DNA of 64,000 nt, taken from NCBI RefSeq assembly GCF_032191835.1, contig NC_083236.1, positions 53,134,001 through 53,198,000 on the forward strand, given 5' to 3'. The position numbers and the translations under genes are program-made. Numbering within the stretch: the first letter of the stretch is position 1; each line of letters begins with the position of its first letter. Below are positions 23,716 to 59,090 of the stretch, piece by piece. The stretch is from Heteronotia binoei. Its lineage: Eukaryota. The notes below the pieces were generated by a model. The model was not told where the DNA came from and searched no databases. It saw only the letters and a list, made by a program, of their open reading frames with translations.

Positions 23716-24948
23716 CTTATTAGTTGTTGCACCTAAATGGGATTTCATGTTCAGAGGCAGTCGGCCTCTGGATGCCAGATGTTGTAGACAAAGAATGGGG
23801 AATGATAAGACCTTTGTGCAGGAGTGGAATTCTAGCAGGAGCTCCTTTGCGTATTAGGCCACACACCCCTAATGTAGCCAATCCTCTAAACTTACAGGGC
23901 TCTTTTTTGTAAGATCTCGGAGGATTGGCTACATCAGGGGTGTGTGGCCTAATATGCAAATGAGCTCCTGCTAGAATTCCACCCCTGCCTTTGTACCCCC
24001 ACCCCATTAGTAAATGGAGGCATCTGCCCACTTTTTGAAGGAGAATACTGGGCTAAAGAGACCATTGAATCTGATCTAGCAGAATACCGATGATGTATAT
24101 TTGTGGAGCAAAAGAGAGAAATTCTATAGTACAGTAAATACTAGCGAGAATGATTCTATCTATAAACCGCCTGCTCCAAAGAGAAATGATTTTAGGTTTG
24201 CAACCTCAGCCCTAAAGGTAATGTATACAGAAGAACCAGAGAAGAAGAATAAGATGGGGAAGACAAAATGGTAGAGCAGAAAAACTGTGAATTGTTGCAA
24301 ATGTCATAAAAGGAAAGCCAGGCTGATCAAAGCCCACAACACTGTAATCATAGGAGCAGCCTGCTGGAAGTCCATTTGTCATTACATAGACCCCTGTCTC
24401 CCAGGGAAATTACTGTCAGCCCAAAGTACACTAAAGAAGTGGAGATCAAAGCAATGCATTAGAAACAGACTTCACGGATTTTTAGAGTAGTGGGACAGAA
24501 AAATAGCGCACGGTCCAAACGGATCCTTGTAAATCTCTGTGACTGAATGCATCCGTGGAGAAAGGGGTCTCTCATTGCCTTTTTTTGTGACTAAAAACAT
24601 CTGAAACTAAGTTGGTACTTCCATATTTATTTTCTATTTATTAAATACAATAGAAATATTGGGAGCCCATTTGGTGTAGTGGTTAAGCACACAAACTCTT
24701 ATCTGGGAGAACCGGGCTTGATTCCCCGCTCCTCCACTTGCAGCTGCTGGAATGGCCTTGGGTCAGAAATAGCTCTCGTAGGAGTTGTCCTTGAAAGAGC
24801 AGCTTCTGGGAGACCTCTTTCAGCCCCACCTACCTCACAGGGTGTCTGTTGTGGGGGGAGGGAAGGTAAAGGAGAGTGTGACCGCTTTGAGATTCAGAAT
24901 GAAGAGTAGAGTATAAATCCAATATAATCTTCTTCGCTCATACACTCA

Positions 24949-29668: not shown

Positions 29669-31633
29669 AAGTCAAGAACAAGAGAGAAGTCACTTCAGGA
29701 TTAGAACAAACACAACCACGAAGGTTATAGTGACCCAATAACGAAATGATGTTAAAGTACAATAATCATAATATACGCAAAGTACAATTGAAATCATAAA
29801 GAACATGGAGTCCCAATGTGCGGGGAATCGACTTGAAACATCCTGCTTCCATCCTTCTTCAAGCATTGGGTGCTCCTTCCATAACAGTTATATAAAAAGT
29901 TCCTACTTCAAAAAACTTAACAATGATTCATCCGACCTGTCTTATAACTGCAGATAATATAAACACTTTCATAAAAGAACTACAAAGTTTCCAAAAGTTC
30001 ATTGAGGCTGTATGAGCATTGTGCCTGCTTTGAACTTTTGGAAACTTGTAGTGCCTTTATGAAAGTGTTTATATTATTTGCAGTTATCAGATGCGTCGGA
30101 TGAATCATTGTTAAGTTTTTTGAAGTAGGAACTTTTTGTATTGTGGAAGGAGCACCCCATGCTTGTTGGTTAAAACAATTTTTATTTAGTAACCTATGGT
30201 AACAATATCTTATTCCTGCATCATTAATAACTTCTTTTTATCTATCCCATATATTACTTTCTAACCACCCCTCCCCCCGTTACTTGACCCCCGCCGGTGT
30301 TATTTACTTATAATACTAATATTAAAAGGTACCCTTAACTAATAAAAACAAATATTTACATTCTTCTTCCTTCTAAGACTTAATCATTATCAAAAATTGT
30401 CCAATGTCCTTTTATTTTCCACTCTTTTTCTACATATCTTCTGAACTTTTCCCACTCCATCTTAAAAACTTCTAAGTCATAGTCTCTTAAAATTCTTGTT
30501 AATTTGTCCATTTCACTCCATGTCACTTTTACAATCCAAGCCCATTTCTCTGGTATTTTTTTCTTGCTTCCACAACTGCGCATATAATGTCCTAGCAGCT
30601 GAAAGCAAGTACCAAATTATAGTTCTATCTTCTTTTGGAAATTTTTCGATTTGTAATCCCAACAGAAAAGTCTCTGCAATTTTCTTAAATTCATATCCCA
30701 AGATCCTAGAAATTTCTTGTTGAATCATCTGCCAATACTTTTTTGCTCTTTCACAAGTCCACCACATATGGTAGAAAGAACCTTCATGTTTTTTACATTT
30801 CCAACATCTGTCTGGCATCTTATTGTTCATCTTTGCCAACTTTTTAGGAGTCATATACCATCTATATACCATTTTAAAACAGTTCTCTTTAATACTATGA
30901 CATGTCGAAAGCTTCATAGAGTTCTTCCACAAATATTCCCAAGTTTCCATCTGTATTTCTTTATTTACATTTATTGCCCACTTAATAATTTGAGATTTCA
31001 CTACTTCATCTTCTGTAGACCATTTTAAAAGTAATTTATATAGTTTTGAAATTAATTTTTCATTGTCTCCAAGCAGAACTCTTTCCATTTCTGTTTGCTC
31101 TTTTTTTATTCCTTCCGTTTTAATATCATTCTCCACCAAGCTCTTTATTTGTTGCATTTGGAACCAATCATATTTATTATTCTGCTCTTCAGCAGTTTTC
31201 AATTCTGTTTTGCCACTTTGTATTTTTAATGGTTGATTATATGACAACCACGCGTCTCATAACTGCAAATAATATAAACACTTTCATAAAGGCACTACAA
31301 AGTTTCCAAAGTTCAAAGCAGGCACAATGCTCATACAGGCTCAATGAACTTTGGAAACTTTGTAGTGCTTTTATGAAAGTGTTTATGTTATTTGCAGTTG
31401 GATGAATTGGATGAATGGATACGTTGGATGAATCATTGTTGTTTTTCATATAACTGTTATGGAAGGAGCACCCCATGCTTGAAGAAAGATGGAAGCAGGA
31501 TGTTTCAAGTTGACTCCCTGCACATTGGGACTCCATGTTCTTTATGATTTCAACTGTACTTTGTGTATATTATGATTATTGTACTTTAATATCATTTCAT
31601 TATTGGGTCACTATAACCTTCGTGGTTGTGTTT
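29669..31633. repeat. Nested inverted-repeat element of unknown family flanking the L1 fragment
   Basis: ~29708-30085 is the reverse complement of ~31255-31633; ~29862-30166 is itself a hairpin. Confidence 0.85.
30172..31247 (-). mobile_element. 5'-truncated L1-clade LINE (ORF2 C-terminus + 3' UTR)
   Basis: 244-aa ORF with RCWKC...YHMWWTC zinc knuckle and the YRWYMTPKKL motif, continuing via a frameshift (30380-30583); A-rich 3' end near 30175. Confidence 0.88.
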
Positions 31634-32281
31634 GGTGTAGTGGTTAATTGTGTGGACTCCTATCTGGGAGAACCGGGTTTGATTCCCCACTCCTCCAGTT
31701 GCACCTGCTGGAATGGCCTTGGGTCAACCATAGCTCTCGTAGGAGTTGTCCTTGAAAGGGCAGCTTCTGTGAAAGCCCTCTCAGCCCCACCCACCTTACA
31801 GGGTGTTTGTTGTGGGGGAGGAAGATAAAGGAGATTGTGAGCTGCTCTGAGACTCTTGAGTGGAGGGCGGAATATAAATCCAATGTCTTCTTCTTCCCAA
31901 CGGGAGATTGGCAGCCCTATGCATTACCAAAAGCAGTTGCTCTAGTTAAATGACTCGATACTCAATGCACTTTTCCTGTTCTGTGGCATGAAACAACAGT
32001 ACTTCTAATTGCCATTTTTCATCTGTCAAAAATTACTACATATTCCGCGCCCCCCCCCCCCCCAAACAGATAACAGAGAGTGCATCTGTTCGGTCAAAGA
32101 ATGAGACATAAATCAACCCACGTTCAAGCCAGCAGTTTGTGTTATTGGCTGACTGAGGCCTGGAATGAGAACTGGGAATAACAGCTAGCAAACGTTTCCT
32201 TCATCTACCCACAGGAACGGTGTTCTTCTCATTTTAATATCATCTCTTATAGCTTTAACGTTGTCTTCTGAAATTCCACAG

Positions 32282-34792: not shown

Positions 34793-36077
34793 TTTGTGTA
34801 AGGTAACTTCAAATCTACCTTTGTTGCAGAGTTTGAAGGAACAGGTGTGGAAAGCAACGGAGTGCATACCTGGAGATAGAAACCAGCAGTGCCCAAGCAC
34901 GTTAAGAAGCATGGCTTCTGATGCAAAGTTTATTTGGGCTACTGAGGAGGCTGGCTTAAGCCAGTTTCAGCAGCTTAATCAGGTTCTGTTATCAGGTCAA
35001 AGAACAACTAAGTGGATCTTAAAGCAGTGAGATAATCACACCTAGAGCTTGAGTCAAGGTGAAATGGCTCGGTCTCAGCTCAGGAGATGGAGAGAGCATC
35101 CTGCAGGTTATTCATTTTATTAATGAGCTTGTTATATAAAAACACCCCAGTGCATAATAAAACAGGCAAAACATCTGAAGTAGGCAGAGATGGTGTGGGG
35201 GTCAGATGCGTTCAGTGAGCTCAGTCCGTCACTCAACAAAGCGCCTTTCAGACATCCATCTTGAGCGGGTTGTAAAAGATGCCAGCCACAACTCCTCAGC
35301 CACTTTATCTTTTATACTGTGTTAAGCCCTCCTAAACAGAGGAAGTCATAATTTCAAGTAATAAAGAGAAGGATGAGGTGGCGGTATGGTTTTCTTGAAC
35401 TTTGTGTCCCTTTCCATTTACGGCTCTGAGTAGCCTATGTCACCATTGCACATTTGGGGGGGAAATTAAATTCATATGCCTCTGCAGTTCATTTCTACTT
35501 TTTGATTCGGATTGTAGGCAAGACTTCAGGAAAGTCTTGTCTACAAGACTTTTCTGAAGCTGAGCCCTCTTCTCTCCCTTCCTCCCCCACCCAGCAAGGC
35601 AGCTGCTCCCTGGATAGAGACAACTGGCCTTCTCCCCCCCCCCCACTACACTGGGGAAACTTCACTTTGTGGTAGGGTTGTTGACCTTCAGGTGAGGGCT
35701 GGAGATCTGGAATTGCAACTGATTTCCACACTACATAAAGCACTTATCCATCTGTCCGTCCATCTATTCAATTGGTTGCTTTGGAAAAAGAAGAAGAAGA
35801 GGGATTTAGATCCTGCCCTTCACACGGAGTCTCAAAGCAGTTTACCATCTCTTCTTCCTCTCCCCACAAAAGACACCCTGTAAGGTAGGTAGGAGAGCTC
35901 TGAGAGAACTGTGGCTTGCCCAAGGTCACCCAGCGCTGCATGTGGAGGAGGAGTGGGGAATCAAACCTGGTTGTCCAGGTTAGAGTCTGCACTCTTAACC
36001 ACTACCCCAAACTGGCTCTCCACTGGAAGGTGGACTGCAGAGCATCATACCCGATCAAGGTCCTTCCCCTCTCTAAG

Positions 36078-36570
36078 TGTCAGAACTTAAGAACTCCAGG
36101 CAGATCCCATACTTAGTTTCCAAGCTAGGATTTTATTAGAGAGAACTAAGAACTGTTAGATACAAGGTACAAGATAACAGTGATGGCGAGAGCCAGCACT
36201 GGCCCAGTTTTATATAGTAAAACAAACAACCCACAAAGCTTTAATTCACACCGTTACAGGCACATCTGTCTTCCCACCAGTGCTATCAGCAAAGACGTTG
36301 CCTCCTTACTCTGAAGGCCACACGATTCGGCTTCAAAGGGTGTCAGTGTGAGAAAGTACAGAGATACAACATTATTCAGTCTACAGCCCCCAAATACTTT
36401 GGATACCATCGGGGCAGGGTTAACTACTACTCAGGCACTTCAGGTTAAGAAAGGTTACAATATGGGGTCGGTCTGGTTCAACGCTCAGGTCCACTCTATG
36501 CATACTCGCCAACCATCAATTATACTGGTTCTACATTAAGCTAGCAATAATAAAGTTACAAGTTCTGACA
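36078..36570 (-). repeat. 3' LTR (493 bp)
   Basis: Direct repeat of 41679-42171 (offset 5601); adjacent to the polypurine tract. Confidence 0.97.
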
Positions 36571-39500
36571 TACTGCCCCCCCTAAGCGCCCTCCCCCGGG
36601 GGGTGGCGGCTTGGGCTTGTGCGGGTACAGCAGGTGAAACTTTTTTAACAATTGCGGCGCAGCTACGTTCTGAGACTCGACCCATTCATCACAGCTCGGG
36701 GGGAAGTGCTTCCACCTGATTAAGTAATACAGTTTCCCCCGTTTGACTTTGGAGTCCAGGATTTCGTGGACTTCATGGTGACTCTGACCCCTCACTGTCG
36801 TCGGAGGGGGCGGCGGAGCCCTGGGATGGAAGGACGTGGCACCAGGGTCTTTCCGGAGTAAGCTGCAATGAAAAACAGGATGGATTTTGCTTAGAGACTT
36901 GGGCAGCTCGAGTTCTGCAGTCACCTTATTGATTACTCGTTTGATCCTAAAAGGCCCAAGAAACTTCAACGCAAGTTTGCGGCAGGGCTGAGGAAGGGGG
37001 AGGTTTTTTGTGGACAAAAAGACAGTGTCTCCCACTCTCAATTCCCATTCAGGAGAGTGTTTTTTATCAAACTGTTTTTTGTAAGCCTTTTTCGCTTCCT
37101 CCAGGTTCTCCTGAATTCCCTTCCAGCTCTCCCGAAGGCCTTCCCACCATTGTTGGCACGATGTGGGTTCTGAGGGGGTGGCAGGGAGGGGAAGCGTTGG
37201 GAAAGGCTTGCCCTCATAGCCATTTATGATTTGGAAAGGAGAGGTTTTAGTAGAGCTGTGAAGGCTGTTGTTGTAGCCGTATTCAGCGAATGGGAGTAGG
37301 TCCACCCAGTTGGACTGTTGGAAGTTAATGAAACAGCGGAGGTACTGTTCTAGAAGGCTATTAACCCTCTCCGTCTGTCCGTCCGACTGGGGGTGGTAGG
37401 CTGAGCTGAGGCCCTGCTCAATACCCGCAAGTTTGCAAAACTCCCGCCAGAAGTTGGCAACGAACTGCGTCCCGCGGTCGCTAATGACCTTGTCTGGGAA
37501 CGAGTGTAGGCGTACAATGTGTGTAAAGAAAAGTTGGGCAAGTTTTTTAGCCGTGGGGAGCTGCTTGCAGGGGATGAAGTGGGCTTGTTTGGAGAATGTA
37601 TCGACCACTACCAAAATAACAGTTTTGCCCTGCGACGGCGGGAGCTCCACAATGAAATCCATAGACACTACCGACCAAGGCCGGGTGGCTGTTGGGAGGG
37701 GCACTAGGTGGCCGGGAGGTTTACCCCCTCTTCGTTTAGCCATCAGACAGGTGGGACATGAGAGGACGAATTCGGAGACGTCTCTTTTGAGCCTAGGCCA
37801 CCAAAACTGTCGGGTAAGGAGGTTGAGGGTTTTGACATAGCCGAAATGGCCCGCCAGGCGGCTGGAATGACAATGCTCTAAAATCTGCTTGCGGAGGGAG
37901 GAGGGCACATAGATCTTTTCGTTGTGCAACAGGAGGCCGTCCTCGCTTTTACGGAGGTTCGGTGGTTGGTCTGCTTCCCGAGCAGTCTCCGCAACTAACT
38001 GAGACAAGAGGTCTGGCTCCGGGGGACCGATCCTCTTCCCGGAGCGGGTGGTGACCCCCCCCGCGATGGCCGAAGGGGGGATAAGGGAGTCCACCACCTC
38101 CTCGCGGAGGCTCTCATGCTGTGGCAGGCGGGAGAGGGCGTCCGCCAAGAAATTCTTGGTACCTGGGATGTGTTTCAGTACAAAGTCGAATTTGGCGAAA
38201 AACCCAGCCCACCGGATTTGTTTTGCAGTCATTTTGCGGCGCCCGGTCAATGCCTCGAGATTTTTGTGGTCAGTCCAGATTTCAAATGGGACTCTGGCCC
38301 CTTCAAGCCAGGAGCGCCAGGTTTTCAAGGCAAACATGACTGCAAAAGCCTCCTTGTCCCACACTGACCAATTTTTCTGCTCGTTCGAGAACTTTCGTGA
38401 AATGTAGGCGCAGGGGCGCAGAACCCCGTTGTCCCCCCTTTGCATTAATATGGCTCCGACGGCGGCGTCGGAAGCATCACATTGAACCACGAAAGGTTTT
38501 AACTCGTCAGGGTGGGCCAACACGGGCTCCGAGGTGAAGAGGCGTTTCAATTCTGTAAAGGCTTTTTGACACTCGGGCGTCCACGTTAGGCGCGCGCCCG
38601 GCTTTTTTGCCTCTGCCCCCTTCCCCTTTGTTTTAAGGAGCTCCGTAAGGGGTAACATGATGGTGGCGAACCCCTTTATGAAGTCGCGGTAAAAATTTGC
38701 GAACCCGAGAAAACTTTGGAGCTGTTTGCGGGTTCGTGGGGGCTCCCAGTCTAGCACCGCTTGAACCTTTGCTGGGTCCATTGACAACCCTTCCCCCGAT
38801 ACTCGGAAGCCTAGATAGTCTAGTTCAGTCTTGTGAAATTCACATTTTGATAGTTTGGCATACAACTTGTGCTTGCACAGGGTGCTCAACACTTTTCTGA
38901 CTAGTGGTACATGTGACTTGAGATCTGGCGAATAGATAATGATGTCATCAAGGTACACCACCACCCCCTTAAACAGGAACTCTCGCAGAACCTCGTTGAT
39001 AAAGTTCATGAATACCCCAGGGGCCCCCTGTAGCCCGAAAGGCATAACCAAGTACTCAAATTGTCCTAGCGGGGTATTGAACGCGGTCTTCCACTCGTCC
39101 CCCTCCCTGATGCGGACTCGGAAGTACGCGTCTCGGAGGTCGAGTTTTGTGAATATTTTCCCTGTGGCCACAGTATTCAATAGGTCCTTAATCAATGGGA
39201 TCGGGTAGGCATTAGACATCGAAATCCCGTTTATCGAGCGAAAATCTGTGCAAAGTCTAAGCGACCCATCCTTTTTCTTTCTGAAGAGGACGGGGGCGGC
39301 ATGGGGGGCTGTTGCCGGTCGTATGAACCCCCGCTTCAGGTTTTTGTCCAAAAATTTGCGGAGTTCCGCTTTCTCCGCCCAACCCATGGAGTACAGTTTC
39401 GCTTTTGGCAGTTGCTGCCCCGGGATCAGTTCGATTGCACAGTCCGTGGGGCGGTGAGGTGGTAACTCATCCGCCTCCTTCTCACTAAAGGCCAGTTTTA

Positions 39501-40062
39501 AGTCCCGGTATTCTTTGGGGATCGAGGCGACCTCCTCGAGGGTGAGGCAGGCTCGCTCATTCCGGGGAGGCGGATGCGGCCCCCACTCGGGGCGCCAATG
39601 GTGGTGTTCGCACCTCCAGTCCGGGAATCGGACGATCTGCTCCTCCCACCTTATGTCTGGCTGGTGGCGGGCGAGCCAACCCGAGCCCATCACCACATCA
39701 AACGAGCAAGAGGGGGCAATTACAAAAGTTTCGATCCCCCAATGCTCTTCGGTCCCAACGGGGACCGCCTGCGTTTCTAGCTTACATGGCTCTCCCCTCA
39801 TGGGCCCCCCGTCCATCTGCTGGAAAAGCATGGGTAGCGGGAGGGGGGACGTGGCTAATCCTAGCGCCTCTACTAGGCGGGGGGTGATTAAGTCCCGGTT
39901 GCACCCCGAGTCGATTAGTGCTCGGGCATGCATGAACCGTTTTAGGTTCGGGTTGAGAAGGGTTACGGCCATAAACAATAAACCCCCAGTGGCTCTCACC
40001 GTGAGGAGTGCCGGCTGTTGCTGGACCTGCTTCGCGGCACCCATTAAAGCAGGTCGTTGTCG
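36556..40062 (-). CDS. pol: Pol: protease, RT, RNase H, integrase, chromodomain; in the -1 frame relative to gag
   Basis: ALIDSG protease, YLDD RT, CDAS RNase H, H-H-C-C and SMDFI...SDRG integrase, GPF module, C-terminal chromodomain (EILDSK...YYLIRWKHFPPSCDEW). The frame is open from the slippery site at 40062; the ORF track starts it at the ATG at 40044. Confidence 0.95.
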   Translation of the reverse strand, partial: RQRPALMGAAKQVQQQPALLTVRATGGLLFMAVTLLNPNLKRFMHARALIDSGCNRDLITPRLVEALGLATSPLPLPMLFQQMDGGPMRGEPCKLETQAVPVGTEEHWGIETFVIAPSCSFDVVMGSGWLARHQPDIRWEEQIVRFPDWRCEHHHWRPEWGPHPPPRNERACLTLEEVASIPKEYRDLKLAFSEKEADELPPHRPTDCAIELIPGQQLPKAKLYSMGWAEKAELRKFLDKNLKRGFIRPATAPHAAPVLFRKKKDGSLRLCTDFRSINGISMSNAYPIPLIKDLLNTVATGKIFTKLDLRDAYFRVRIREGDEWKTAFNTPLGQFEYLVMPFGLQGAPGVFMNFINEVLREFLFKGVVVYLDDIIIYSPDLKSHVPLVRKVLSTLCKHKLYAKLSKCEFHKTELDYLGFRVSGEGLSMDPAKVQAVLDWEPPRTRKQLQSFLGFANFYRDFIKGFATIMLPLTELLKTKGKGAEAKKPGARLTWTPECQKAFTELKRLFTSEPVLAHPDELKPFVVQCDASDAAVGAILMQRGDNGVLRPCAYISRKFSNEQKNWSVWDKEAFAVMFALKTWRSWLEGARVPFEIWTDHKNLEALTGRRKMTAKQIRWAGFFAKFDFVLKHIPGTKNFLADALSRLPQHESLREEVVDSLIPPSAIAGGVTTRSGKRIGPPEPDLLSQLVAETAREADQPPNLRKSEDGLLLHNEKIYVPSSLRKQILEHCHSSRLAGHFGYVKTLNLLTRQFWWPRLKRDVSEFVLSCPTCLMAKRRGGKPPGHLVPLPTATRPWSVVSMDFIVELPPSQGKTVILVVVDTFSKQAHFIPCKQLPTAKKLAQLFFTHIVRLHSFPDKVISDRGTQFVANFWREFCKLAGIEQGLSSAYHPQSDGQTERVNSLLEQYLRCFINFQQSNWVDLLPFAEYGYNNSLHSSTKTSPFQIINGYEGKPFPTLPLPATPSEPTSCQQWWEGLRESWKGIQENLEEAKKAYKKQFDKKHSPEWELRVGDTVFLSTKNLPLPQPCRKLALKFLGPFRIKRVINKVTAELELPKSLSKIHPVFHCSLLRKDPGATSFHPRAPPPPPTTVRGQSHHEVHEILDSKVKRGKLYYLIRWKHFPPSCDEWVESQNVAAPQLLKKFHLLYPHKPKPPPPGGGRLGGAVCQNL
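36573..36597 (-). promoter_or_regulatory. Polypurine tract
   Basis: GGGGGAGGGCGCTTAGGGGGGGCAG followed by TA then the TG of the 3' LTR. Confidence 0.85.
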
Positions 40063-40068
40063 TTTCCC
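40006..40068 (-). promoter_or_regulatory. -1 programmed ribosomal frameshift signal: G GGA AAC slippery heptamer + H-type pseudoknot
   Basis: Heptamer 40068-40062 in gag phase; 6-nt spacer; stem 1 GACCTGCTT (40055-40047) / AAGCAGGTC (40032-40024); loop GGGTGCCG pairs with CGGCACTC (40013-40006). Confidence 0.88.
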
Positions 40069-41624
40069 GCCGACTCGGTGTCGTCCGACTCCCCGGTCGA
40101 TTCTTCCACGGTTTCTGGTTCGGCGGTAAAATCCTCGTCAGTCGCCAAGGTGGTGGCGACGGAGCCCCGTCCGGGCTCTTTCGGCCGACTACTCTTTTTC
40201 TTCTTGGGCCCCGATGCGGTTGGCCTGGCTGTCGGCGGGGTGGACCCCGCTTTGGCTGGGCAGTTGGAGGCGAGGTGGTCCGGGTCGCCGCACCGGTAAC
40301 ACTTTCGGGCAGTGGTGGGGGTCGAGGTTGTCGGGGCCCGTCGCCCCTCCGCCTTGGTGGGTGTGGATTTCAACCCCTTCTTCGCCAGTTGCTGTCGGCG
40401 AAGCCCCACGTGCTGGATGTTGGTCTCGACCTCTCCGGCTAGCTGGATCCACCCGACCAAGGTGTCGGGTCGCCCGTGGCTGTAGCAGCGGTCGAGGACG
40501 TTCGGGTTCAGCCCGTTACAAAAAGCAGTATATTTCATAATCTCGTTCCACCCTCTCACTGCCGCGCAGTAGCCCAGGAACTCCGTGGCATACTCGCGAA
40601 TGGATCGGTTGCCTTGTTCGATGCGCTGGAGGGCTGCGATGGCTTTCTCCTCGCGGAGCGGGTCGCCGTACTGGCGGAGCATGGCGTGCAGGAACCCCGC
40701 TACAGTTGCTAGCTCGGGCTTCCTCGCGGTGAACAGCCCGACGTACCATTTGCGGGCTGGACCTCTCAGTCGGGACGCAATGAGGTACACTCGGCTGGCT
40801 TCGGTCGGGTAGTCCGCACCCCAGTGGGTAAAGAACGTGTCGCACTGTATGGTGAAGTACTCCACGTCCTCTGGGCTCCCGTCGAATGTAATTTTCAGCT
40901 CTCTCCCCCCCCCTGCGACCGGGGGTGCCGCGGGTTGGGGCACCGGGGCCGGCAGGGCCGGTAGGGCTGGTGCAGCTGGGGCCGGCGGCGCTGGCGGTGC
41001 GGGCACGGGGACCGCCGGGGGCGCCGGAACTGGCGGCGCCGGAGGCGCTGGGACCGGCGGCGCGGGGGCCCCCGGGGCCGGAGGCGCCACTGGTTGTGGG
41101 GCCGGTGGGGCTGGAGCGGGCACCACCGGCGGCGCGGGAGCCAGCGGGGCCGGTGGAGCCACGGGCGGTTGCCCCAGCGGCAGCCCTCCCACGGGGATCC
41201 CCAGGACCGCCGTCTGCAAGGTGCGGAGCTGGTCGTAGATCGCGCCTAGGTTCTGTTGCATCTCCTCGGCCATCATAACTCGGGAGGCGTGTACGTCGTT
41301 GTGAATTTCCCGTACATAGTCGAACAGGTCGTTGCGGAGGCTCCGGACCGGGTCGTCCCCGCCTCGCGGTTCTGGACCTTCGCCCTGGTCGTCGTCTCCG
41401 TCTCCGCTTGCCCCGTCGCCCAGCATACTTCTGTACCGCTGCTCCGCCGCGTCGATCGCCGCCGTGGATTTCCGCGGGCTCCAGGATCGGGGTGCGGCGA
41501 ACGCGTCCACCGAGAAAGGTGCGGGCACCTTAATCTTGCGCCTCACCCCCGTCACCTTCGGGTCGAGCGGCGGGTCCTCCGTTGGAGTGGTGGGCTCTCC
41601 GTTGTCTGGAACCTTTGCAGCCAT
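40044..41624 (-). CDS. gag: Gag (526 aa): N-terminal helical region, Pro/Ala-rich linker, Ty3-type capsid, CCHC zinc knuckle
   Basis: Uninterrupted ORF starting 54 nt after the 5' LTR; FDGSPEDV capsid start, QGNRSIREYATEF major-homology-like motif, CYRCGDPDHLASNC knuckle. Confidence 0.94.
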   Translation of the reverse strand: MAAKVPDNGEPTTPTEDPPLDPKVTGVRRKIKVPAPFSVDAFAAPRSWSPRKSTAAIDAAEQRYRSMLGDGASGDGDDDQGEGPEPRGGDDPVRSLRNDLFDYVREIHNDVHASRVMMAEEMQQNLGAIYDQLRTLQTAVLGIPVGGLPLGQPPVAPPAPLAPAPPVVPAPAPPAPQPVAPPAPGAPAPPVPAPPAPPVPAPPAVPVPAPPAPPAPAAPALPALPAPVPQPAAPPVAGGGRELKITFDGSPEDVEYFTIQCDTFFTHWGADYPTEASRVYLIASRLRGPARKWYVGLFTARKPELATVAGFLHAMLRQYGDPLREEKAIAALQRIEQGNRSIREYATEFLGYCAAVRGWNEIMKYTAFCNGLNPNVLDRCYSHGRPDTLVGWIQLAGEVETNIQHVGLRRQQLAKKGLKSTPTKAEGRRAPTTSTPTTARKCYRCGDPDHLASNCPAKAGSTPPTARPTASGPKKKKSSRPKEPGRGSVATTLATDEDFTAEPETVEESTGESDDTESAGNDNDLL

Positions 41625-41665: not shown

Positions 41666-41676
41666 ATCACTGTTAT
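41666..41676 (-). promoter_or_regulatory. Self-priming primer-binding site (ATAACAGTGAT), 2 nt downstream of the 5' LTR
   Basis: Perfectly complementary to ATCACTGTTAT at 41785-41775 in the LTR, which lies 30 nt downstream of the TATA box. It lacks the TGG start of tRNA-type PBSs. Confidence 0.85.
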
Positions 41677-41678
41677 AA

Positions 41679-42171
41679 TGTCAGAACTTAAGAACTCCAG
41701 GCAGATCCCATACTTAGTTTCCAAGCTAGGATTTTATTAGAGAGAACTAAGAACTGTTAGATACAAGGTACAAGATAACAGTGATGGCGAGAGCCAGCAC
41801 TGGCCCAGTTTTATATAGTAAAACAAACAACCCACAAAGCTTTAATTCACACCGTTACAGGCACATCTGTCTTCCCACCAGTGCTATCAGCAAAGACGTT
41901 GCCTCCTTACTCTGAAGGCCACACGATTCGGCTTCAAAGGGTGTCAGTGTGAGAAAGTACAGAGATACAACATTATTCAGTCTACAGCCCCCAAATACTT
42001 TGGATACCATCGGGGCAGGGTTAACTACTACTCAGGCACTTCAGGTTAAGAAAGGTTACAATATGGGGTCGGTCTGGTTCAACGCTCAGGTCCACTCTAT
42101 GCATACTCGCCAACCATCAATTATACTGGTTCTACATTAAGCTAGCAATAATAAAGTTACAAGTTCTGACA
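41679..42171 (-). repeat. 5' LTR (493 bp)
   Basis: Ends TGTCAGAACTT...AAGTTCTGACA (11-bp terminal inverted repeat); no difference from 36078-36570 seen on base-by-base reading. Confidence 0.97.
41809..41817 (-). promoter_or_regulatory. LTR TATA box (TATATAAAA); predicted TSS 41785; poly(A) signal AATAAA at 41738-41733
   Basis: Canonical ~30-nt spacing to a CA initiator. Duplicated in the 3' LTR (offset -5601). Confidence 0.75.
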
Positions 42172-42288
42172 CTCTCCCAGGCACTGCTCTCAAATTTCTA
42201 GGTATTTCCAAACCCAGAACTGGCAACTCTACCTTGCGATAATCTGTAAGAATTCTCACAATTCTCTGGAGGTCTCATATTTTAATAT

Positions 42289-43984: not shown

Positions 43985-44250
43985 AAGAAGAATTGCAGAT
44001 TTATACCCCGCCCTTCTCTCTGAATCAGAGACTCAGAGCGGTTTACAATCTCCTATATCTTCTTCCCCCACAACAGACACCCTGTGAGGTGGGTGGGGCT
44101 CTCACAGCAGCTGCCCTTTGAAGGACAATCTCTGCCAGAGCTATGGCTGACCCAAGGCCATTCCAGCAGGTCCAAGTGGAGGAGTGGGGAATCAAACCCA
44201 GTTCTCCCAGATAAGAGTCCACCTACTTAACCACTACACCAAACTGGCTC
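43985..44250 (-). mobile_element. Squam3-like SINE
   Basis: Reverse complement of the 9510 copy; other minus copies at 7169-7404, 25215-25415, 32755-32928, 35784-36020, 55250-55514 and 56130-56410. Confidence 0.85.
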
Positions 44251-45797
44251 ATAATCTATCAGAGAATCATATGCCAAAGCCCCTTCCTGTCACAGCTGCT
44301 GCAGCATAAAAGCCCTTTTGTACCTTGGTAGAGACTAGGTCTGAAAATACTTTGGGATCTTCAACAGGGGATATATTCCAATAGCGAGAGAGGAACAAAC
44401 CCCACAAGACCTTACAACAGTACTGTTGTAATCTAGCTCTTTCAAATGACAATTCATATATATAATATGTTCAATACATGAGCAATAACATTTAGAAATG
44501 TCAACTTTATCTTCCAGTAACCTGTCACCAGTCCTTCAAAACCAAAGTTTCCATGACTTGATCCATAAAACCCTCTGGGCAGACTTAAAAGTGGAGTGAT
44601 GCTTCAGCATATACTGTTGCCTACTGGACAAGCGAAGTTTAGGTCTTGTCCCAGATACAATCTGCAGTGGTAATAGAGTGTGGATCTTCTTTCTCTGTGA
44701 ACAGCTCTACCCAAGTGTTTGGGTGTGCTTCATCCGTGCAATATCATAAGCACATGAATACCCCTCCACATATCAGTATGCTGTAGTTCACATACTTCAT
44801 TGCACTAGAGTGCAATGCTTCCCTACCATTAAATTAGTTTTCTCCATGTGACTCTCTTATTTTATAAACCTGTGATGGTATGGCTGAATCCCCAGAACCT
44901 TGTATGGGAGAGCTACGTGGCACAAACGAGATCTTGTACTAATTAATTCATATCCATATAGCAGGTCTTCTTCAAAGGATCTGAGACCACACTATCTCTG
45001 AGAAGCTGTCCCCTGAAGAACAGAGTTGGATCTCCTTCCATTAGTAGTTGGGTAGTACAGTCTTAAGAGCCCCGTGGCGCAGAGTGGTAAAGCTGCAGTA
45101 CTGCAGTCAGAGCCCTCTGCTCACAACCTGAGTTCAATACCAGCGGAAGCTGGTTCAGGTAGCTGGCTCCAGGTTGACTCAGCCTCCCATCCTTCCGAGG
45201 TTGGTAAAATGAGTACTCAGCCTGCTGAGGGAAAAAGTGTAGATGACTGGGGAAGGCATTGGCAAACCACCCCGTAAAAAGTCTGCCATGAAAACATTGT
45301 GAAAGCAGCAGCATCCCAGAATCGAAAACGACTGGTGCTTGCACCTTCTTTAGGACAGTCTTTGAACTACAGTCAAAGGTGTCTGCCGCTCTTTGCATGT
45401 TTCCCCTGCAAGTGACAATGATCTTTGCAGCCAGGGAAACGCTAGAAAGAGTTGGTCTGTAGTTGCTGAAGTGATCAGGACTTGATACTGCTGGTAGTGA
45501 AGAGGTTCATTGGGATATGCCTTGTGGAGCTTTGTCTCGGGACTCCAACAGGTAGAGAAATTAAATGTCGGATCGAACCAAGTCAAGTGTGAGTTGCTTT
45601 GTCAGGCGTGTTGAATTGGACTTAAGGCTATAAGAAGAGCCAGACCAGTGGTCCATCTAGTCCAGCATCCTGTGTCACACAGTGACCAACCAGTTCCGGA
45701 GGTCCAACAACAGGACCTAGAGGCCAAGGCCTTCCCCTAATGTTGCCGCTAAAGTACCACTGATAGACCTCCATGAATCTGTCTAGTCCCTTTTTGC

Positions 45798-46367: not shown

Positions 46368-48874
46368 ACAGCTAATTCTGCATTTTAATGATTCTCTGTG
46401 TAAAATTAGGGTTGCCAGCCTCAAGGTGCGGCCTGGAGATCTCCCGCTTTTACCACTGATCTCCAGCTGGCAGAAATCAGCTCCCCTGGAGAAAATGGCT
46501 GCTTTGAAAGATGGATTCTATAGCAATGTACCATGCTGAGGCCCCTCCCCTCCCCAAACCCCACTCTCTTTTGGCTCCACCCCCAAAGCGTCCAGGTATT
46601 TTCCAACACACACCTGGAAGCCCTAGTAAGGATTTTGTTTTGTCCATCCCAAATCTACTGCTCATCAGCGTCATTGGATGCCCTAGGATTTGGGAAGAGG
46701 GAGATAAAGGTCTCTGCCAACTCTCTCCATTCCATGCATAAACCTCTATCAAATCCCCCTTTAGCTGTCTCTTTTGTAAACTGAAAAGTCCCAGACTCTT
46801 CAGCCTTTCTTCAGGGAAGTTGCTCCAACCACCTAATCTTCTTGAGAGCCAGTTTGGTGTAGTGGTTAAGTGTGCGGACTCTTACCTGGGAGAACTGGGT
46901 TTGATTCCCCACTCCTCCACTTGCACCTGCTGAGATGGCCTTGGGTCAGCCATAGTTTTCATAGAAGCTGTTCTTGAAAGGGCAGCTGCTGTAAAAGCAC
47001 TCTCAGCCCCACCTACTTCACAGGGTGTTTGTTGGGGGGCGGGATGTAGAGGAGATTGTGATCGCTCTGAGACTCTGAGATTCAGAGTATAGGGCAGGAT
47101 ATAAATCCAGAATCATCATCATCTTCTTCTTCTTGGTCAGCCATACTATGCAACTGTGGATGTCAGTTTTGGCCATAGAGGTTAGGAATCTCAGGCCTGA
47201 GCAAGGGCTTTAGCATTCTGCATACTCCTTTTCCATAGAAGCAGGACACAGGATTTCTAGTGTCTTGACCCCACTGGTGGACCTCCTGATGGCACATGGG
47301 TTTTTGTGGCCACTCTGTGACACAGAGTGTTGGACTGGATGGGCCGTTGGCCTGATCCAACATGGCTTCTCTTATGTTCCTACATTATGTAAAATAATCA
47401 CAAGCAAGTCTGTTTTCTGAGCCAATGTGACAAAGTGATTGGACTAGGATCTGGGAAACCCAAGTTCAAATCCCCATTTGTGCCACAGAAGCCTGCTGGG
47501 TCGTGTTGGGCCATTCACACACTTGCCGAGCCAACCTACTTCATAGGGCTGTTGTGAGGATAAAATGGAGGAGAGGAAAATGATGTAGGCTACTTTGGGT
47601 CCTCATTGGGGAAAAGGGGGGGTATAAACAAAGTCATTAAATTAGTTGATTTGGGTACAGGGTTTTTGCTTTCCTCGTTCCACAAGTTGGGTTACCTTTT
47701 TTGGGGAAGGGGGTAGCATAAACCCCTTTGGGTTTAGTTGAGATGTGGATGGCCAGATCAGTTGTGCGGCATATCCATTGGGAGCGTGTTGTAATATATT
47801 ATCACAGTAACGGAAATGCAATAAGACGTCTGCTGATTTGTTTCTTCCATATTGTGTCATAAAATATCTTTATTTCTTTTCAGTAATAAACCATACTGCA
47901 TTGCAAATCCAATAAATAAGACATAAAAAGTTCATTCCTCTCCCTCCATAGCAGTTTCGTCCGGCCGCTTTTAAAGTACATTTATGTTTAACCTTGCTTT
48001 ACAACCTGCGTGTTAAGCTGCAGTCTCTCTTTGTCGTACCCGATGCTGCAAAAGATTTCTCAGACTAGCTGGGGAAACAAAGATGATAGATGTTTCTGCA
48101 TGCTAGGATTTGTCACATCTCTTGACAGGATGGTTTATTGATATAAGTCACTTACATTCCACCTCTTCAGCTATTCCAGACCATTTACAAACCTGTTTAA
48201 AATCATAATATGAAACAATCACAAAAAAAACCTAAGCAAAGAGACTTGATGTGAAATAGTTTCCACAATATCTGAGACCTGAAATTACCACAGCCTCGCA
48301 CCGGTTGCATCTGAGCCAGAATTCGCTTCACTCCTCCTAGATTGGGCACGTGAAATCTCACTTCTGATTGGTTGGTAGCTTCTCTGGGCATGGTTTCAGA
48401 TGAGCATTTATCTTGCCAAATATTCCGATTTCCTCTAGGTATGTTAATGTAAACTGCATTGGCATGTATTTGTGATTAACTGGCATTGAACGCATACAGG
48501 TGATCTACTATTGCAAAGTGCTTCAACTGTTGCTTTTGAGGATTCATTGGCTGAGCCCAGATACTGTGTGACGATACAATTGTGTGTGCGCGTCACTGTA
48601 TGTTTTAGGCCAAAGCAAGTGGATTCAGGATAGCATGTTCCTATTAGAATCAATCCTGAATCAAACTTTTTGTTGAGCATCCAGTCAGTCACAGGTTCAC
48701 CTCTTGATTCTTCTTTTGGAATTATACTATGGGAATCTTAGTTCCATGAAAGGCAATTCCATGAATTCTCAGCACTTTATACAATGTACAGTACCCAGGA
48801 TGCCTTGGTAGGTGATACAGCAGCTGAAGAGTATAAGATGTGTAGAGATTTGAAGCATAGATCAGTGTATAGAC

Positions 48875-49281
48875 CAGGGGTGGCCAAACTGTGGCTTGGA
48901 AACTACGTGAGGCTCTTTCACACATATTTTGTGGCTCTTGAAGCCCCCACCACCCTGTCAGTCAGCTTGGAGAAGGCATTTCTCTCTTTAAACCATTTCA
49001 AGCCAAGTCAGCTAGCAGCTTGGAGAATGCATTTCAAGATAAAGTTGCTTTCTTTCCACTTCTCNNNNNNNNNNNNNNNNNNNNNNNNNNNNNNNNNNNN
49101 NNNNNNNNNNNNNNNNNNNNNNNNNNNNNNNNNNNNNNNNNNNNNNNNNNNNNNNNNNNNNNNNNNNNNNNNNNNNNNNNNNNNNNNNNNNNNNNNNNNN
49201 NNNNNNNCATGCCTTGCAACTCTCAAATATCTGACGTTTATTCTGTGTGGCTCTTACATTAAGCAAGTTTGGCCACCCCTA
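48875..49281. mobile_element. hAT (Charlie-like) MITE, CAGGGGTGGCCAAACT termini, containing an assembly gap
   Basis: TSD gtatagac on both sides; N-run 49065-49207. Confidence 0.85.
49065..49207. other. Assembly gap (143 N)
   Basis: N-run. Confidence 1.
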
Positions 49282-54800: not shown

Positions 54801-57800
54801 GTTGTTTTGTCTGAGAGGCACGAACTTGGCACAGTCAAACACTGGAGCCGCCTGACTGGAATTTAATCATCCACGGTGCAGGTAGACGTGGGCTTTCTGC
54901 ATTCTGTTCTTGTATTCGCATCTCGGGTGCCGAAGCTAAGCTTTAGCTGGAAGGAGTTATTTGCCCAGACTTGAGGCCGTACTGAATCAGGTGGGCAACT
55001 CTTTTCCTGGCAAAAAGTCCTGTGCCTTGAGGGACGTGCTCAGAAGGCATGTTGTTGTTTAGTTTAACTTTGGAAAGTTTTGTGTGTTCAGTTTTTCCTG
55101 GGATACACAGTCCAGAATTGAACCATTTAGGGGCTAACAGACCACGCAAAATGCTTTGAGGGCCAATGCTTGAGGTTTTCAGGGAGGCAGCCATGTTGAT
55201 CTGCAGTAAAACAGCTAGATGTGAGTCCACTAGCACTTTAGAGAATAGAAAATATTGCATTTCTATCCTACCCTCCACTCTGAATCTCAGAGTCTCAGAG
55301 CGGCTGACAATCTCCTTAGTCTTCCTCCCTCTCAACAGACACCCTGTGTGGTGGGTGGGGCTGAGAGAGCTCTCCCAGAAGTTGCCCTTTCAAGAATGGC
55401 TCTGCAAGAGCTATGGCTAACCCAGGGCCATTCCAGCAGCTGCAAATGGAGGAGTGGGGAATCAAACCTGGTTCTCCCAGATAAGAGTCTGCGCACTTAA
55501 CCACTGCACCAAACTTAGATTTTTTCAGGGTGTAAACTTTTGAGAATCCAAGCTCCCTTCATCAGAGATGCTCGTGTGTTGTTTATTTATTTATTACATT
55601 AAGCTTATATCCCACCCTTTCCGCAAGTGGATTCAGGGCAGCTCACAACATCAACTCGGCTTTCAACTTGCTGACCTTAAGTCGAGGCACAGAGAAAATT
55701 AGCCTTGGAGGGGAGGGGCCACACAAAGCTTTCCCCACTGCCCAGCAATTTGTCTGAGCTTCATTAGTAAAGCCTCATGCTTCTAAAAACACCACAGATT
55801 TATGATAATTGTGCAAAGCACAATCCAGCCCACAGTGACAGCCTGATTTTCTCCTGATGGATGATACTTGAGCGTACATAACAAGATGGGTTACAAACAC
55901 CATTGTACTCTTGTGTTTCAATGTGTCCTTCTTTTACAGGCTCTGGGAAGTCTGCTAGAGGAGGCACTGTTGCCCAGTGGTTGCTACATATAGGACTCAG
56001 ATTTTGCCTAAAATCAAGAATGGCCTCCAGCTTAGATCCAGCCCCCCCATTTGGCACGTATAGTGTCAGTGCACAGTGTACTGTGTGTAGGGTTGCCAGG
56101 TCCGACTCAAAGAAATATCTGAGGGCTTTAGAAGAAGAAGAAGACTGCAGATTTATACCCCGCCCTTCTCCCTGAATCAGAGTCTCAGAGCAGCTTACAA
56201 TCTCCTATATCTTCTCCCCCCACAACAGACACCCTGTGAGGTGGGTGGAGCTGAGAGGGCTCTCACAGCAGCTGCCCTTTCAAGGACAACTTCTGTAATA
56301 GCTATGGCTAACCCAAGGCCATTCCAGCAGGTGCAAGTGGAGGAGTGGGGAATCAAACCTGGTTCTCTCAGATAAGAGTCTGCACGCTTAACCACTACAC
56401 CACACTAGCTCTAGGGGGATAAGGGCACCTTCTTTTGGGGCTCATAGAACTGGATCCCCTGGTCCAATCTTTTTGAAACTTGCAGGGTATTTTGGGAAGA
56501 TGCACTGAATGCTAAAAATTTGGTGCCTCTATCTAAAAAACCAGACACCCCCCCGAGCCCCAGATACCCACTGATCAGTTCTCCATTATACCCTATGGGA
56601 ATCGGTCTCCATAGGGAATAATGGTGTGTCCAGCATACATTCCCCCCCTTCCTGCTTTCGGGCCTCCAACCCCAGGGGATCCCCTGCTCCCACCTGGGGA
56701 TTGGCAACCCTAACTGTGCGCAATCTGCCTTTATTAGCTATTATAATATGTTTCAGTTAAGTTCCCTGTATCTTGGGCAGACCCATGCTAGATGCAGACG
56801 ACAGTGGCAAAGTGGAGAGGCTAACAGCTCCAGCCCTGGAGCCAAAACCATAGGAGAACACCCCCAGCCAACGCAGGAAGCCAGCAGTAGCCCTCTGCCA
56901 GTGGGATGCTTTTGGCTAGGGACCAGCCGCATCGGGAAGGGCTGACTCACCTATGAGGCTGTTATAAGAAGTAACGGCATCCCATTGGGATTATACTGGG
57001 ATCCAGGCTGGCAAGGCAAGGAAGGTCTCTGCCCAAGGGGCAGCTGCAACTCACAGGTAGGATGTAAAAGCCTAGAGGGAGTTTGGGGCTGAACTGAGCA
57101 GTAATAGGGCTTTGGGGTATTGTTCTTAACTGCCCAAGAGGAAGAGCGAAGGGACATGCGGGCTCATTTGTGAACTCTATTTAGAGCAGGAATTGATCCT
57201 GGCCACTGCCATGGGTCTTTTGTCAGACAGGGTCTAGGTTTTTTGACTTGGCTGTCGTCTGAAATTGTTAACTTGAAATTGATTGATTGGTTGTTTTTGT
57301 CAGCTATTTTAAAGTTCTGTAATTGTTTTCTTGATGTTTTCCACCATGAGCCTGTTTGGGGAAGGGCAGGATAGAAATGTGGATGGATGGATGAGAAGTC
57401 CAGTTGGATCACAAGGGAAAGCCTGCTGCTGTAAACCTGAGAACAACCCAGTAAAATGGACTCTGATTCAAGGTGCACATGGACAAATGACCGCCTCCCA
57501 GCCTGATGTGCCTGCCAGCACTCAGAATTCCCAGCTCAGAGACTTGCGTGCTTTCTGATAGGCGTACAGCTCTTTGGGGCAGACGAGTACCCCCACTCAC
57601 TTCTATGCAAACATGGGGATCAACTCCTTCAGCAGGCATGACTGGGAGAGGCCATTTTGTTTGCACTGCCGAACCCATGTTACAGATCAGAATAATGTTG
57701 CAGTGCTCCAAGGGCTGAATAGCTGCCAATAACATCACACTGCTTGACGCATATAAAGTAGAGATTTTTTTTGCGATGCAAAAGCTATTCTAATAAATCA

Positions 57801-58572: not shown

Positions 58573-59090
58573 CAGGGGTGGCCAAACTGTGGCTCGGGAG
58601 CCACATATGGCTCTTCCACACATATTGTGTGGCTCTTGAAACCTCCATCAGCTGACTTGGAGAAAGCATTTCTCTCTTTAAATCACTTTGTCAAGCCAGC
58701 TGGTGCCTTGAAGAATGCATTTAAAATTGCTTTCTTTCCACCTCNNNNNNNNNNNNNNNNNNNNNNNNNNNNNNNNNNNNNNNNNNNNNNNNNNNNNNNN
58801 NNNNNNNNNNNNNNNNNNNNNNNNNNNNNNNNNNNNNNNNNNNNNNNNNNNNNNNNNNNNNNNNNNNNNNNNNNNNNNNNNNNNNNNNNNNNNNNNNNNN
58901 NNNNNNNNNNNNNNNNNNNNNNNNNNNNNNNNNNNNNNNNNNNNNNNNNNNNNNNNNNNNNNNNNNNNNNNNNNNNNNNNNNNNNNNNNNNNNNNNNNNN
59001 NNNNNNNNNACATCTGACATTCATGATTTGCGGCTCTCAATCATCTGGCATCTATGTGGCTCTTACATTAAGCAAGTTTGGCCACCCTTG
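58573..59090. mobile_element. Same hAT MITE family, containing an assembly gap
   Basis: TSD atgtaggg on both sides; N-run 58745-59009. Confidence 0.85.
58745..59009. other. Assembly gap (265 N)
   Basis: N-run. Confidence 1.

What the first reader, a model, noticed from the sequence alone, without database searches (positions are those of the whole stretch)
41666..41817. tRNA-independent self-priming site: the PBS pairs with the element's own predicted 5' end
Seen: on the element strand the 5' LTR ends ...CTGACA, then TT, then ATAACAGTGAT (41676-41666). Its exact 11-nt complement, ATCACTGTTAT, is inside the LTR at 41785-41775. It begins 30 nt after the first T of TATAAAA (41815), i.e. at the expected transcription start, with AATAAA downstream (41738-41733). 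There is no TGG-initial tRNA-type PBS. Established: S. pombe Tf1 primes minus-strand synthesis by annealing the first 11 nt of its mRNA to the PBS, and the same has been proposed for vertebrate Tf1/sushi elements. Inference: this apparently young reptile element keeps a complete self-priming architecture. That makes it a candidate vertebrate model for this mechanism.
Basis: partly seen in the sequence, partly recalled or inferred. Interest (0 to 1): 0.8.

Follow-up and report, generated by a model that had tools for sequence, protein, structure and literature searches.

The report
Self-priming LTR retrotransposon in a squamate
An intact, very young jumping gene of the Tf1/sushi type carries an 11-base site that pairs with the predicted start of its own RNA. 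This is the tRNA-free way of starting DNA copying that is already regarded as typical of this group, so the finding is real but ordinary for its family.

Summary
On the minus strand a 493-bp LTR ends CTGACA (41679). It is followed by TT and then ATAACAGTGAT (41676-41666). The exact complement lies in the LTR at 41785-41775, 30 nt after the first T of TATAAAA, with AATAAA downstream. No TGG occurs in the 39 nt after the LTR. A complement this long arose in 5 of 5000 shuffled LTRs.

The element is a complete chromodomain Ty3/gypsy retrotransposon. Its LTRs are 100% identical. It has gag, a G GGA AAC -1 frameshift site, and PR-RT-RH-IN-chromodomain.

Seven related squamate-type elements (pol 48-53% identical) have the same layout with different sequences. 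All 88 base-pair cells are canonical, and 9 of 11 pairs show compensatory changes. In 5 of 8 elements the TATA-like box lies exactly 30 nt upstream. A fish relative has a 10-bp version.

This strongly supports Tf1-type self-priming and argues against a tRNA primer. However, the literature already calls self-priming a common feature of Tf1/sushi elements, vertebrates included, and reports full-length chromoviruses in reptiles. The verdict is a new member of a known kind. The start site, the cleavage and the auxiliary "pretzel" duplexes remain unproven.

The parts
41679..42171 (-). 5' LTR, 493 bp, TGTCAG...CTGACA
   Evidence: 100% identical to 36078-36570; ends read
41809..41817 (-). TATA box (TATATAAAA) in U3
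   Evidence: Read; the first T of TATAAAA (41815) is 30 nt before the primer start
41775..41785 (-). Predicted self-primer, i.e. the first 11 nt of the transcript (ATCACTGTTAT); predicted start site at A41785
   Evidence: Exact complement of the PBS. The position relative to TATA is conserved in relatives. The start site itself is inferred, not mapped
41733..41738 (-). AATAAA polyadenylation signal, 47 nt after the predicted start
   Evidence: relatives have AATAAA or ATTAAA 26-62 nt after their primer site
41677..41678 (-). TT spacer between the LTR end and the PBS
   Evidence: A 2-nt spacer in the five Crotalus relatives; L002 has 1 nt and L006's LTR end is unmapped
41666..41676 (-). Primer-binding site ATAACAGTGAT, complementary to the predicted 5' end of the RNA
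   Evidence: The 11-bp helix closes the minimum-energy fold of the leader
40044..41624 (-). gag ORF, 526 aa (Retrotrans_gag, Ty3_capsid, CCHC zinc knuckle)
40062..40068 (-). Slippery heptamer G GGA AAC in the gag frame; predicted -1 frameshift into pol
   Evidence: The pol frame is open across the junction and reads ...LIDSG (protease motif) just downstream
36556..40044 (-). pol ORF, 1162 aa from its first ATG (RT, RNase H, integrase zinc finger and core, Tf2-1-like SH3, chromodomain). Its stop codon lies 12 nt inside the 3' LTR
36576..36597 (-). G-rich polypurine-like tract just upstream of the 3' LTR, separated from it by CAGTA
   Evidence: Read; its function is inferred
36078..36570 (-). 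3' LTR, carrying a second copy of the primer sequence at 36184-36174
42172..42176 (-). Target-site duplication GAGAG, 5' copy, directly adjacent to the LTR
36069..36077 (-). 3' junction: 4 extra nt CTTA (36077-36074), then the target-site duplication GAGAG (36073-36069)
   Evidence: relatives have clean adjacent 5-bp duplications

Best explanation
This is an intact, recently inserted chromodomain Ty3/gypsy LTR retrotransposon of the Tf1/sushi (vertebrate 'V-clade') type. It most likely starts reverse transcription by self-priming. The proposed steps are as follows. (1) RNA polymerase II starts at A41785, 30 nt after the TATA box in the 5' LTR (inferred). (2) The first 11 nt of the RNA fold back on the PBS, which begins 2 nt after the LTR; the complementarity is shown and it sits in the predicted minimum-energy fold. 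(3) The element's RNase H cuts after nt 11 (inferred from Tf1). (4) The freed 3'-OH is extended through TT, U5 and R up to nt 12, giving a minus-strand strong-stop DNA of about 98 nt (inferred). (5) This DNA transfers to R in the 3' LTR copy, and synthesis continues as in other LTR elements, with plus-strand priming at the G-rich tract upstream of the 3' LTR (inferred). By analogy with how a retroviral PBS is re-copied from its tRNA primer (general retroviral knowledge, not checked for Tf1 in the papers read), plus-strand strong-stop synthesis may copy the attached RNA primer. Each cycle would then rewrite the PBS from the primer. That would explain why the complementarity is perfect in every copy at the time of insertion and why the two 11-mers covary between families (inference).
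For: The exact 11-bp complementarity at the stated positions arose in only 5 of 5000 shuffles. The leader's minimum-energy fold is closed by this helix (-34.7 kcal/mol, z -4.19). The same holds in 8 of 8 elements. Seven relatives with 48-53% pol identity were examined: five Crotalus adamanteus chromosomal copies and two Logan contigs. They carry seven different primer sequences, and each had an exactly complementary PBS at insertion. Where both LTRs map the end (the five Crotalus copies and the window), the PBS begins 2 nt after the LTR; in L002 it is 1 nt and in L006 the LTR end is unmapped. All 88 cells are canonical pairs. Nine of 11 pairs show compensatory changes. Position 1 is always A-U and position 11 always U-A. 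Cognate primer and PBS give 11/11 pairs in every element, whereas non-cognate combinations give mostly 6-10. The single G.U, in L009, is a post-insertion change in the 5' LTR only. The distance from the TATA-like box to the primer is exactly 30 nt in 5 of 8 elements and 31 in one. A fish relative, L010, has a 10-bp version 30 nt after TATATAA. There is no TGG-type PBS. The domain set and the -1 frameshift fit the Tf1/sushi group. The literature states that self-priming is a common feature of this group, shown in Tf1 and proposed for vertebrate members (PMC10085805, PMC6317226, PMC4600332).
Against: There are no transcript data, so the start site is only predicted. The two extra duplexes of the Tf1 'pretzel' structure, which Tf1 needs, were not supported: duplex energies for the 14 nt on either side of the PBS were not better than shuffles in any of the 8 elements. 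The host's tRNA set could not be examined, so an internal-tRNA or tRNA-half primer is excluded only indirectly. No same-family copies were available; the closest pol is 53% identical, so all covariation is between families. To my knowledge, self-priming has never been shown experimentally for any vertebrate element.
Confidence: 0.87

Rival explanations
1. Reverse transcription is primed by a host tRNA, through an internal region or a tRNA half, and the LTR complement is incidental.
For: Some LTR elements use tRNA halves (PMC6317226). The host tRNA set could not be examined, and ARAGORN found no tRNA genes in the window or in the fetched loci. A more distant fish relative, L005, has a TGG-initial PBS, so tRNA priming occurs near this lineage.
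Against: There is no TGG in the 39 nt after the LTR. The PBS differs in almost every related family while the LTR site changes in step with it. A conserved host tRNA would not produce that pattern. A chance 11-mer complement arises at about 0.1% per element, yet it recurs in 8 of 8 elements at the same position.
Confidence: 0.03
2. The 5'-end/PBS pairing is a conserved long-range RNA structure with another role, such as packaging, dimerisation or translational control, and priming happens by some other route.
For: Covariation shows that the pairing is selected or copied, not what it is for. The helix closes a stable leader fold that contains the poly(A) signal.
Against: The helix sits exactly where a PBS must be, 2 nt after the LTR, and no alternative PBS is present. 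It has the same 11-bp length as in Tf1, where priming from it is demonstrated (literature cited in PMC10085805). Perfect Watson-Crick pairing in every copy at insertion (no G.U) fits copying from a primer better than structural selection alone.
Confidence: 0.05
3. The match is a chance coincidence.
For: Only one copy is present in the window.
Against: A match this long arose in 5 of 5000 shuffles for the window alone. It recurs with different sequences in seven relatives and one fish element, at the same position relative to the TATA box and the LTR end.
Confidence: 0.005

Closest known systems
Tf1 (and Tf2) of Schizosaccharomyces pombe, the experimentally proven self-priming LTR retrotransposons
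   Same: An 11-nt PBS just after the 5' LTR is complementary to the first 11 nt of the element's own RNA. Both are chromodomain integrase elements of the Ty3/gypsy type with LTRs ending in CA (PMC10085805).
   Different: Tf1 has a single ORF and its Gag lacks a CCHC knuckle (PMC10085805). This element has gag and pol with a -1 frameshift and a CCHC knuckle. The three-duplex 'pretzel' structure required in Tf1 was not detectable here. The host is a vertebrate. No experiment exists for this element.
sushi-ichi (Takifugu) and the vertebrate Tf1/sushi elements of Butler et al. 2001; the 'V-clade' (Amn-like plus Sushi-like) chromoviruses, including Amn-ichi of Anolis
   Same: They share vertebrate hosts, a chromodomain, a -1 frameshift as the prevailing gag-pol arrangement, and predicted self-priming (PMC10085805, PMC6317226, PMC2774666). 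The LTR 5' end, TGTCAGA, fits the Sushi motif TGTYANR (PMC3601003). The fish relative L010 has the same layout.
   Different: This family's pol is at most 53% identical to anything in the protein collection, so it is a separate family. Its primer sequence is unrelated to those of the Crotalus, Logan or fish relatives. I did not place it in a tree with reference sushi-ichi or Amn-ichi sequences.
Tj1 of Schizosaccharomyces japonicus
   Same: Self-priming was inferred from the same kind of LTR/PBS complementarity, and the element was then shown to be active (PMC4600332).
   Different: Tj1 is a fungal element with an in-frame stop between gag and pol.
PEG10 and other sushi-derived domesticated genes of mammals
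   Same: The gag family is related; relatives are annotated PEG10-like. The slippery heptamer G GGA AAC is the same (the heptamer in PEG10 is from my own knowledge).
   Different: Those are immobile host genes without LTRs or a PBS. This is a complete mobile element.

Membership tests
Tf1/sushi group of chromoviruses (Ty3/gypsy, Metaviridae) | Ty3/gypsy gene order PR-RT-RNase H-IN | tested here: met
   Pfam: RVT_1, RT_RNaseH, Integrase_H2C2 and rve in that order. The best solved relative is the Ty3 Gag-Pol, E 5e-129. The protease motif LIDSG lies upstream of RT.
Tf1/sushi group of chromoviruses (Ty3/gypsy, Metaviridae) | [quoted passage not shown] | tested here: met
   Chromo domain PF00385 at residues 1091-1137 of 1162, after the Tf2-1-like SH3 domain.
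Tf1/sushi group of chromoviruses (Ty3/gypsy, Metaviridae) | PBS complementary to the 5' end of the element's own RNA instead of a tRNA 3' end | tested here: met
   An 11-nt exact complement begins 30 nt after the TATA box, and there is no TGG. The RNA 5' end is predicted, not mapped.
Tf1/sushi group of chromoviruses (Ty3/gypsy, Metaviridae) | Primer and PBS covary among related elements | tested here: met
   Across 8 elements, 88/88 cells are canonical pairs and 9/11 pairs show compensatory changes; cognate pairs beat non-cognate ones.
Tf1/sushi group of chromoviruses (Ty3/gypsy, Metaviridae) | Three-duplex 'pretzel' leader structure (primer-PBS plus two PBS-adjacent duplexes) | tested here: inconclusive
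   The central duplex is present. Duplexes from the 14 nt on either side of the PBS are no better than shuffles in all 8 elements. The only candidates are UGU/ACA and AUGGG/CCCAU, which are short. No pseudoknot-aware prediction was done.
Tf1/sushi group of chromoviruses (Ty3/gypsy, Metaviridae) | -1 frameshift between gag and pol (prevailing in members outside fission yeast) | tested here: met
   G GGA AAC lies in the gag frame 16 nt before the gag stop, and pol is open in the -1 frame. Frameshifting itself was not shown.
Tf1/sushi group of chromoviruses (Ty3/gypsy, Metaviridae) | Placement inside the Tf1/sushi clade in an RT-IN tree with reference elements | not tested
The nearest hits are chromodomain Gypsy elements of squamates, frogs and fishes.
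Tf1/sushi group of chromoviruses (Ty3/gypsy, Metaviridae) | RNase H cleavage after nt 11 and extension from that end | not testable with these tools
   This needs cDNA and RNA analysis.
Tf1/sushi group of chromoviruses (Ty3/gypsy, Metaviridae) | 5-bp target-site duplication | tested here: met
   GAGAG is present on both sides, but with 4 extra nt (CTTA) at the 3' junction. Relatives have clean 5-bp duplications.
tRNA-primed LTR retroelements | PBS starting TGG, complementary to a tRNA 3' end, next to the 5' LTR | tested here: not met
   There is no TGG in the 39 nt after the LTR.
tRNA-primed LTR retroelements | PBS complementary to an internal tRNA region or a tRNA half | not testable with these tools
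   No host tRNA set was available, and ARAGORN found none in the window or the loci. Covariation argues against it indirectly.

The most novel reading that the evidence does not exclude
The copy is a currently active vertebrate self-priming retrotransposon from a gecko-like squamate. Several features are fixed across squamate families: an 11-bp helix, A at position 1, U at position 11, a 2-nt spacer and a start 30 nt after the TATA box. These may reflect an RNase H 'measuring' rule conserved from fission yeast to reptiles. If so, this would be the first vertebrate element in which self-priming could be demonstrated directly.
Probability: 0.4. Interest if true: 0.45.

Novelty: new member of a known kind. 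Interest (0 to 1): 0.3.

Why it matters
Self-priming has been demonstrated only in fission-yeast elements; for vertebrates it rests on sequence inspection. This copy is as good a natural candidate as one could ask for, with identical LTRs, open gag and pol, an intact frameshift site and a perfect primer/PBS pair. The cross-family covariation gathered here is solid comparative support that the mechanism operates in squamates. It does not change the picture of how this group replicates. Its value is as a well-characterised example and a possible study object.

Tried and rejected
- Auxiliary 'pretzel' duplexes: RNAduplex of the 14 nt on each side of the PBS against the R-U5 interior, compared with shuffles, gave no signal in any of the 8 elements.
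- tRNA comparison: ARAGORN found no tRNA genes in the window or in seven loci, so no host tRNA comparison was possible. A comparison with tRNA sequences recalled from memory was not used as evidence.
- Rfam scan of the element and its flanks: nothing relevant.
- Same-family copies: the best pol hit is 53% identical. The gag search gave only a 96-residue piece, 86% identical, inside a Heteronotia binoei gene model whose DNA could not be fetched because the gene range is too long.
- The frog locus for P0014 gave no DNA.
- L008 is embedded in satellite DNA and no LTRs could be defined.
- L005 (Astyanax) has 140-bp LTRs and a TGG-type PBS with no self-complement. Its gene model is composite, so it was not used in the comparison.
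- Empty-site reconstruction from paralogous repeats failed: the repeat in the flank ends about 50 nt before the insertion point.

Full report
**Observation.** Read on the minus strand, the 5' LTR ends ...GTTCTGACA at 41679. TT follows at 41678-41677, and then ATAACAGTGAT at 41676-41666. Its exact complement ATCACTGTTAT lies in the LTR at 41785-41775. The first T of TATAAAA is at 41815, so the complement starts exactly 30 nt later. AATAAA is at 41738-41733. The pairing is exactly 11 bp, because the neighbouring positions on both sides cannot pair. No TGG occurs in the 39 nt after the LTR. In the whole window the exact 11-mer occurs only in the two LTR copies and, as its complement, at the PBS. 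A complement of at least 11 nt to any segment starting 0-8 nt after the LTR arose in 5 of 5000 shuffled LTRs.

**The element.**
- The LTRs are 42171-41679 and 36570-36078, 493 bp each, TGTCAG...CTGACA, and 100% identical.
- Between them lies a 526-aa gag (Retrotrans_gag, Ty3_capsid, CCHC knuckle) and a 1162-aa pol (RT, RNase H, integrase zinc finger and core, Tf2-1-like SH3, chromodomain). The best solved relative is Ty3 Gag-Pol.
- The gag frame contains G GGA AAC at 40068-40062, 16 nt before its stop codon. The -1 frame is open across the junction and reads the protease motif LIDSG shortly after.
- A G-rich tract at 36597-36576 precedes the 3' LTR.
- The target-site duplication is GAGAG. At the 3' junction, four extra nucleotides (CTTA) sit between the LTR end and the duplication.
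- The element is complete, has no visible defect, and was inserted very recently.

**Host.** The closest pol proteins are from squamates: Crotalus 50%, Anolis 49%, and a Logan contig 53%. A 96-residue stretch of gag is 86% identical to part of a gene model from the gecko Heteronotia binoei. The host is therefore a squamate, probably a gecko.

**Comparative test.** No same-family copy could be fetched, so I took related families.
- The relatives are five chromosomal copies from Crotalus adamanteus (L001, L003, L004, L007, L009) and two Logan contigs (L002, L006), with pol 48-53% identical to the window element.
- In each one the sequence just after the LTR is complementary to an LTR site 97-128 nt before the LTR end. 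The PBS begins 2 nt after the LTR in the five Crotalus copies and 1 nt after it in L002; in L006 the LTR end could not be fixed.
- The eight elements carry eight different primer sequences. The five Crotalus copies and L006 share a related primer, and L003 and L009 differ at one base. The window element and L002 are unrelated to these in sequence.
- Across the 11 pairs and 8 elements, all 88 cells are canonical. Nine of 11 pairs show changes on both sides. Position 1 is always A-U and position 11 always U-A.
- Cognate primer/PBS pairs give 11/11 in every element, while non-cognate combinations give mostly 6-10.
- The only G.U, in L009, is a post-insertion change present in the 5' LTR but not the 3' LTR. 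Every copy was therefore perfectly Watson-Crick at insertion.
- In all eight elements the minimum-energy fold of the leader is closed by this helix. For the window element the fold has -34.7 kcal/mol and z -4.19.
- A TATA-like box lies exactly 30 nt before the primer in five of the eight and 31 nt in a sixth. The preceding base is always C, and an AATAAA or ATTAAA signal follows 26-62 nt later in seven of eight.
- A carp-family relative (L010, 40% identical) has a 10-bp version that also begins 30 nt after TATATAA.

**Mechanism.** The data fit Tf1-type self-priming. Transcription starts at A41785. The first 11 nt pair with the PBS. RNase H cuts after nt 11, and the new 3' end is extended through TT, U5 and R to give a strong-stop DNA of about 98 nt, which transfers to the 3' R. 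Only the complementarity, its position and its covariation are shown; the remaining steps are inferred from Tf1 and from general LTR-element replication. By analogy with retroviral PBS copying from a tRNA primer (general knowledge, not checked for Tf1 in the papers read), the plus strand may copy the attached RNA primer and so rewrite the PBS each cycle. This would account for the perfect pairing in every copy and for the covariation. It would also mean the covariation reflects the priming process itself rather than only selection on a structure (inference).

**Rivals.**
- A tRNA primer is unlikely. There is no TGG, and the PBS changes from family to family together with the LTR site, which a conserved tRNA would not produce. 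Internal-tRNA or tRNA-half priming could not be tested directly, because no tRNA genes were available.
- A purely structural role for the helix cannot be excluded by sequence alone. However, the helix occupies the only possible PBS position and has the Tf1 length.
- Chance is excluded by recurrence.

**What is not established.** The start site is a prediction. Tf1 needs two further duplexes next to the PBS, the 'pretzel' structure (PMC10085805). A duplex-energy test against shuffles found no support for them in any of the eight elements, so that feature is inconclusive. No experiment exists for any vertebrate member, to my knowledge.

**Comparison with what is known.**
[quoted passage not shown] 2001 on vertebrate elements. 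It also states that members outside fission yeast mostly use a -1 frameshift.
- PMC6317226 and PMC4600332 say the same for 'yeast and vertebrates'.
- PMC3670739 reports full-length, presumably active chromoviruses in reptile genomes.
- PMC2774666 names the vertebrate V-clade (Amn-like and Sushi-like).
- The window element meets the tested features of this group. Placement in a reference tree was not done.
- It is therefore a new member, at family level, of a known kind. Its priming architecture is the expected one.

**Verdict.** Novelty is low to moderate. The useful additions are the cross-family covariation table, the fixed TATA-to-primer distance, and the documentation of an apparently intact, very young copy. 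Interest is 0.3.

Noticed in passing
window 36069-36077 and 42172-42176: The 5-bp target-site duplication GAGAG is directly adjacent to the 5' LTR. At the 3' LTR it is separated from the LTR end by four extra nucleotides (CTTA). Relatives have clean adjacent duplications. This may be an unusual integration junction or a later small insertion; it remains unexplained.
   Followed up: partly
L005:8654-8810 (Astyanax mexicanus): A more distant relative (pol 40% identical) is flanked by 140-bp LTRs and has a TGG-initial PBS with no self-complement. tRNA-type priming may therefore occur near this lineage. The gene model there is composite.
   Followed up: no
window 40614-40901 (gag residues 242-337): This stretch of gag is 86% identical to an internal part of a Heteronotia binoei short-chain dehydrogenase-type gene model (P0121). 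It is probably a copy of the same family swallowed by a gene prediction. It suggests the window comes from a gecko.
   Followed up: partly
L009:9018-9028 and 14577-14587: The 5' LTR copy of the primer site carries a C-to-T change that is absent from the 3' LTR. It makes a G.U pair with the PBS and is a post-insertion mutation.
   Followed up: yes
window 36556-36570: The pol reading frame runs through the polypurine tract and stops 12 nt inside the 3' LTR.
   Followed up: no
window 49065-49207 and 58745-59009: Two runs of N lie inside arrays with an 8-bp period that are similar to each other.
   Followed up: no
window 29691-29898 and 31443-31650: A 208-nt inverted repeat (92% complementary) brackets about 1.5 kb that contains a 244-aa ORF with no Pfam match. 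It may be a non-autonomous DNA transposon or a foldback element.
   Followed up: partly
window 9506-9787, 24653-24895, 31630-31856, 44096-44260, 46845-47078, 55236-55520, 56126-56412: A short interspersed repeat of about 230-270 nt occurs in at least seven copies in both orientations (79-94% alike). One related copy lies in the flank about 50 nt from the element's 3' end.
   Followed up: no
window 16874-17086: A tandem array of a 33-nt unit (GGCAGCCATTTT... type), with about six copies.
   Followed up: no
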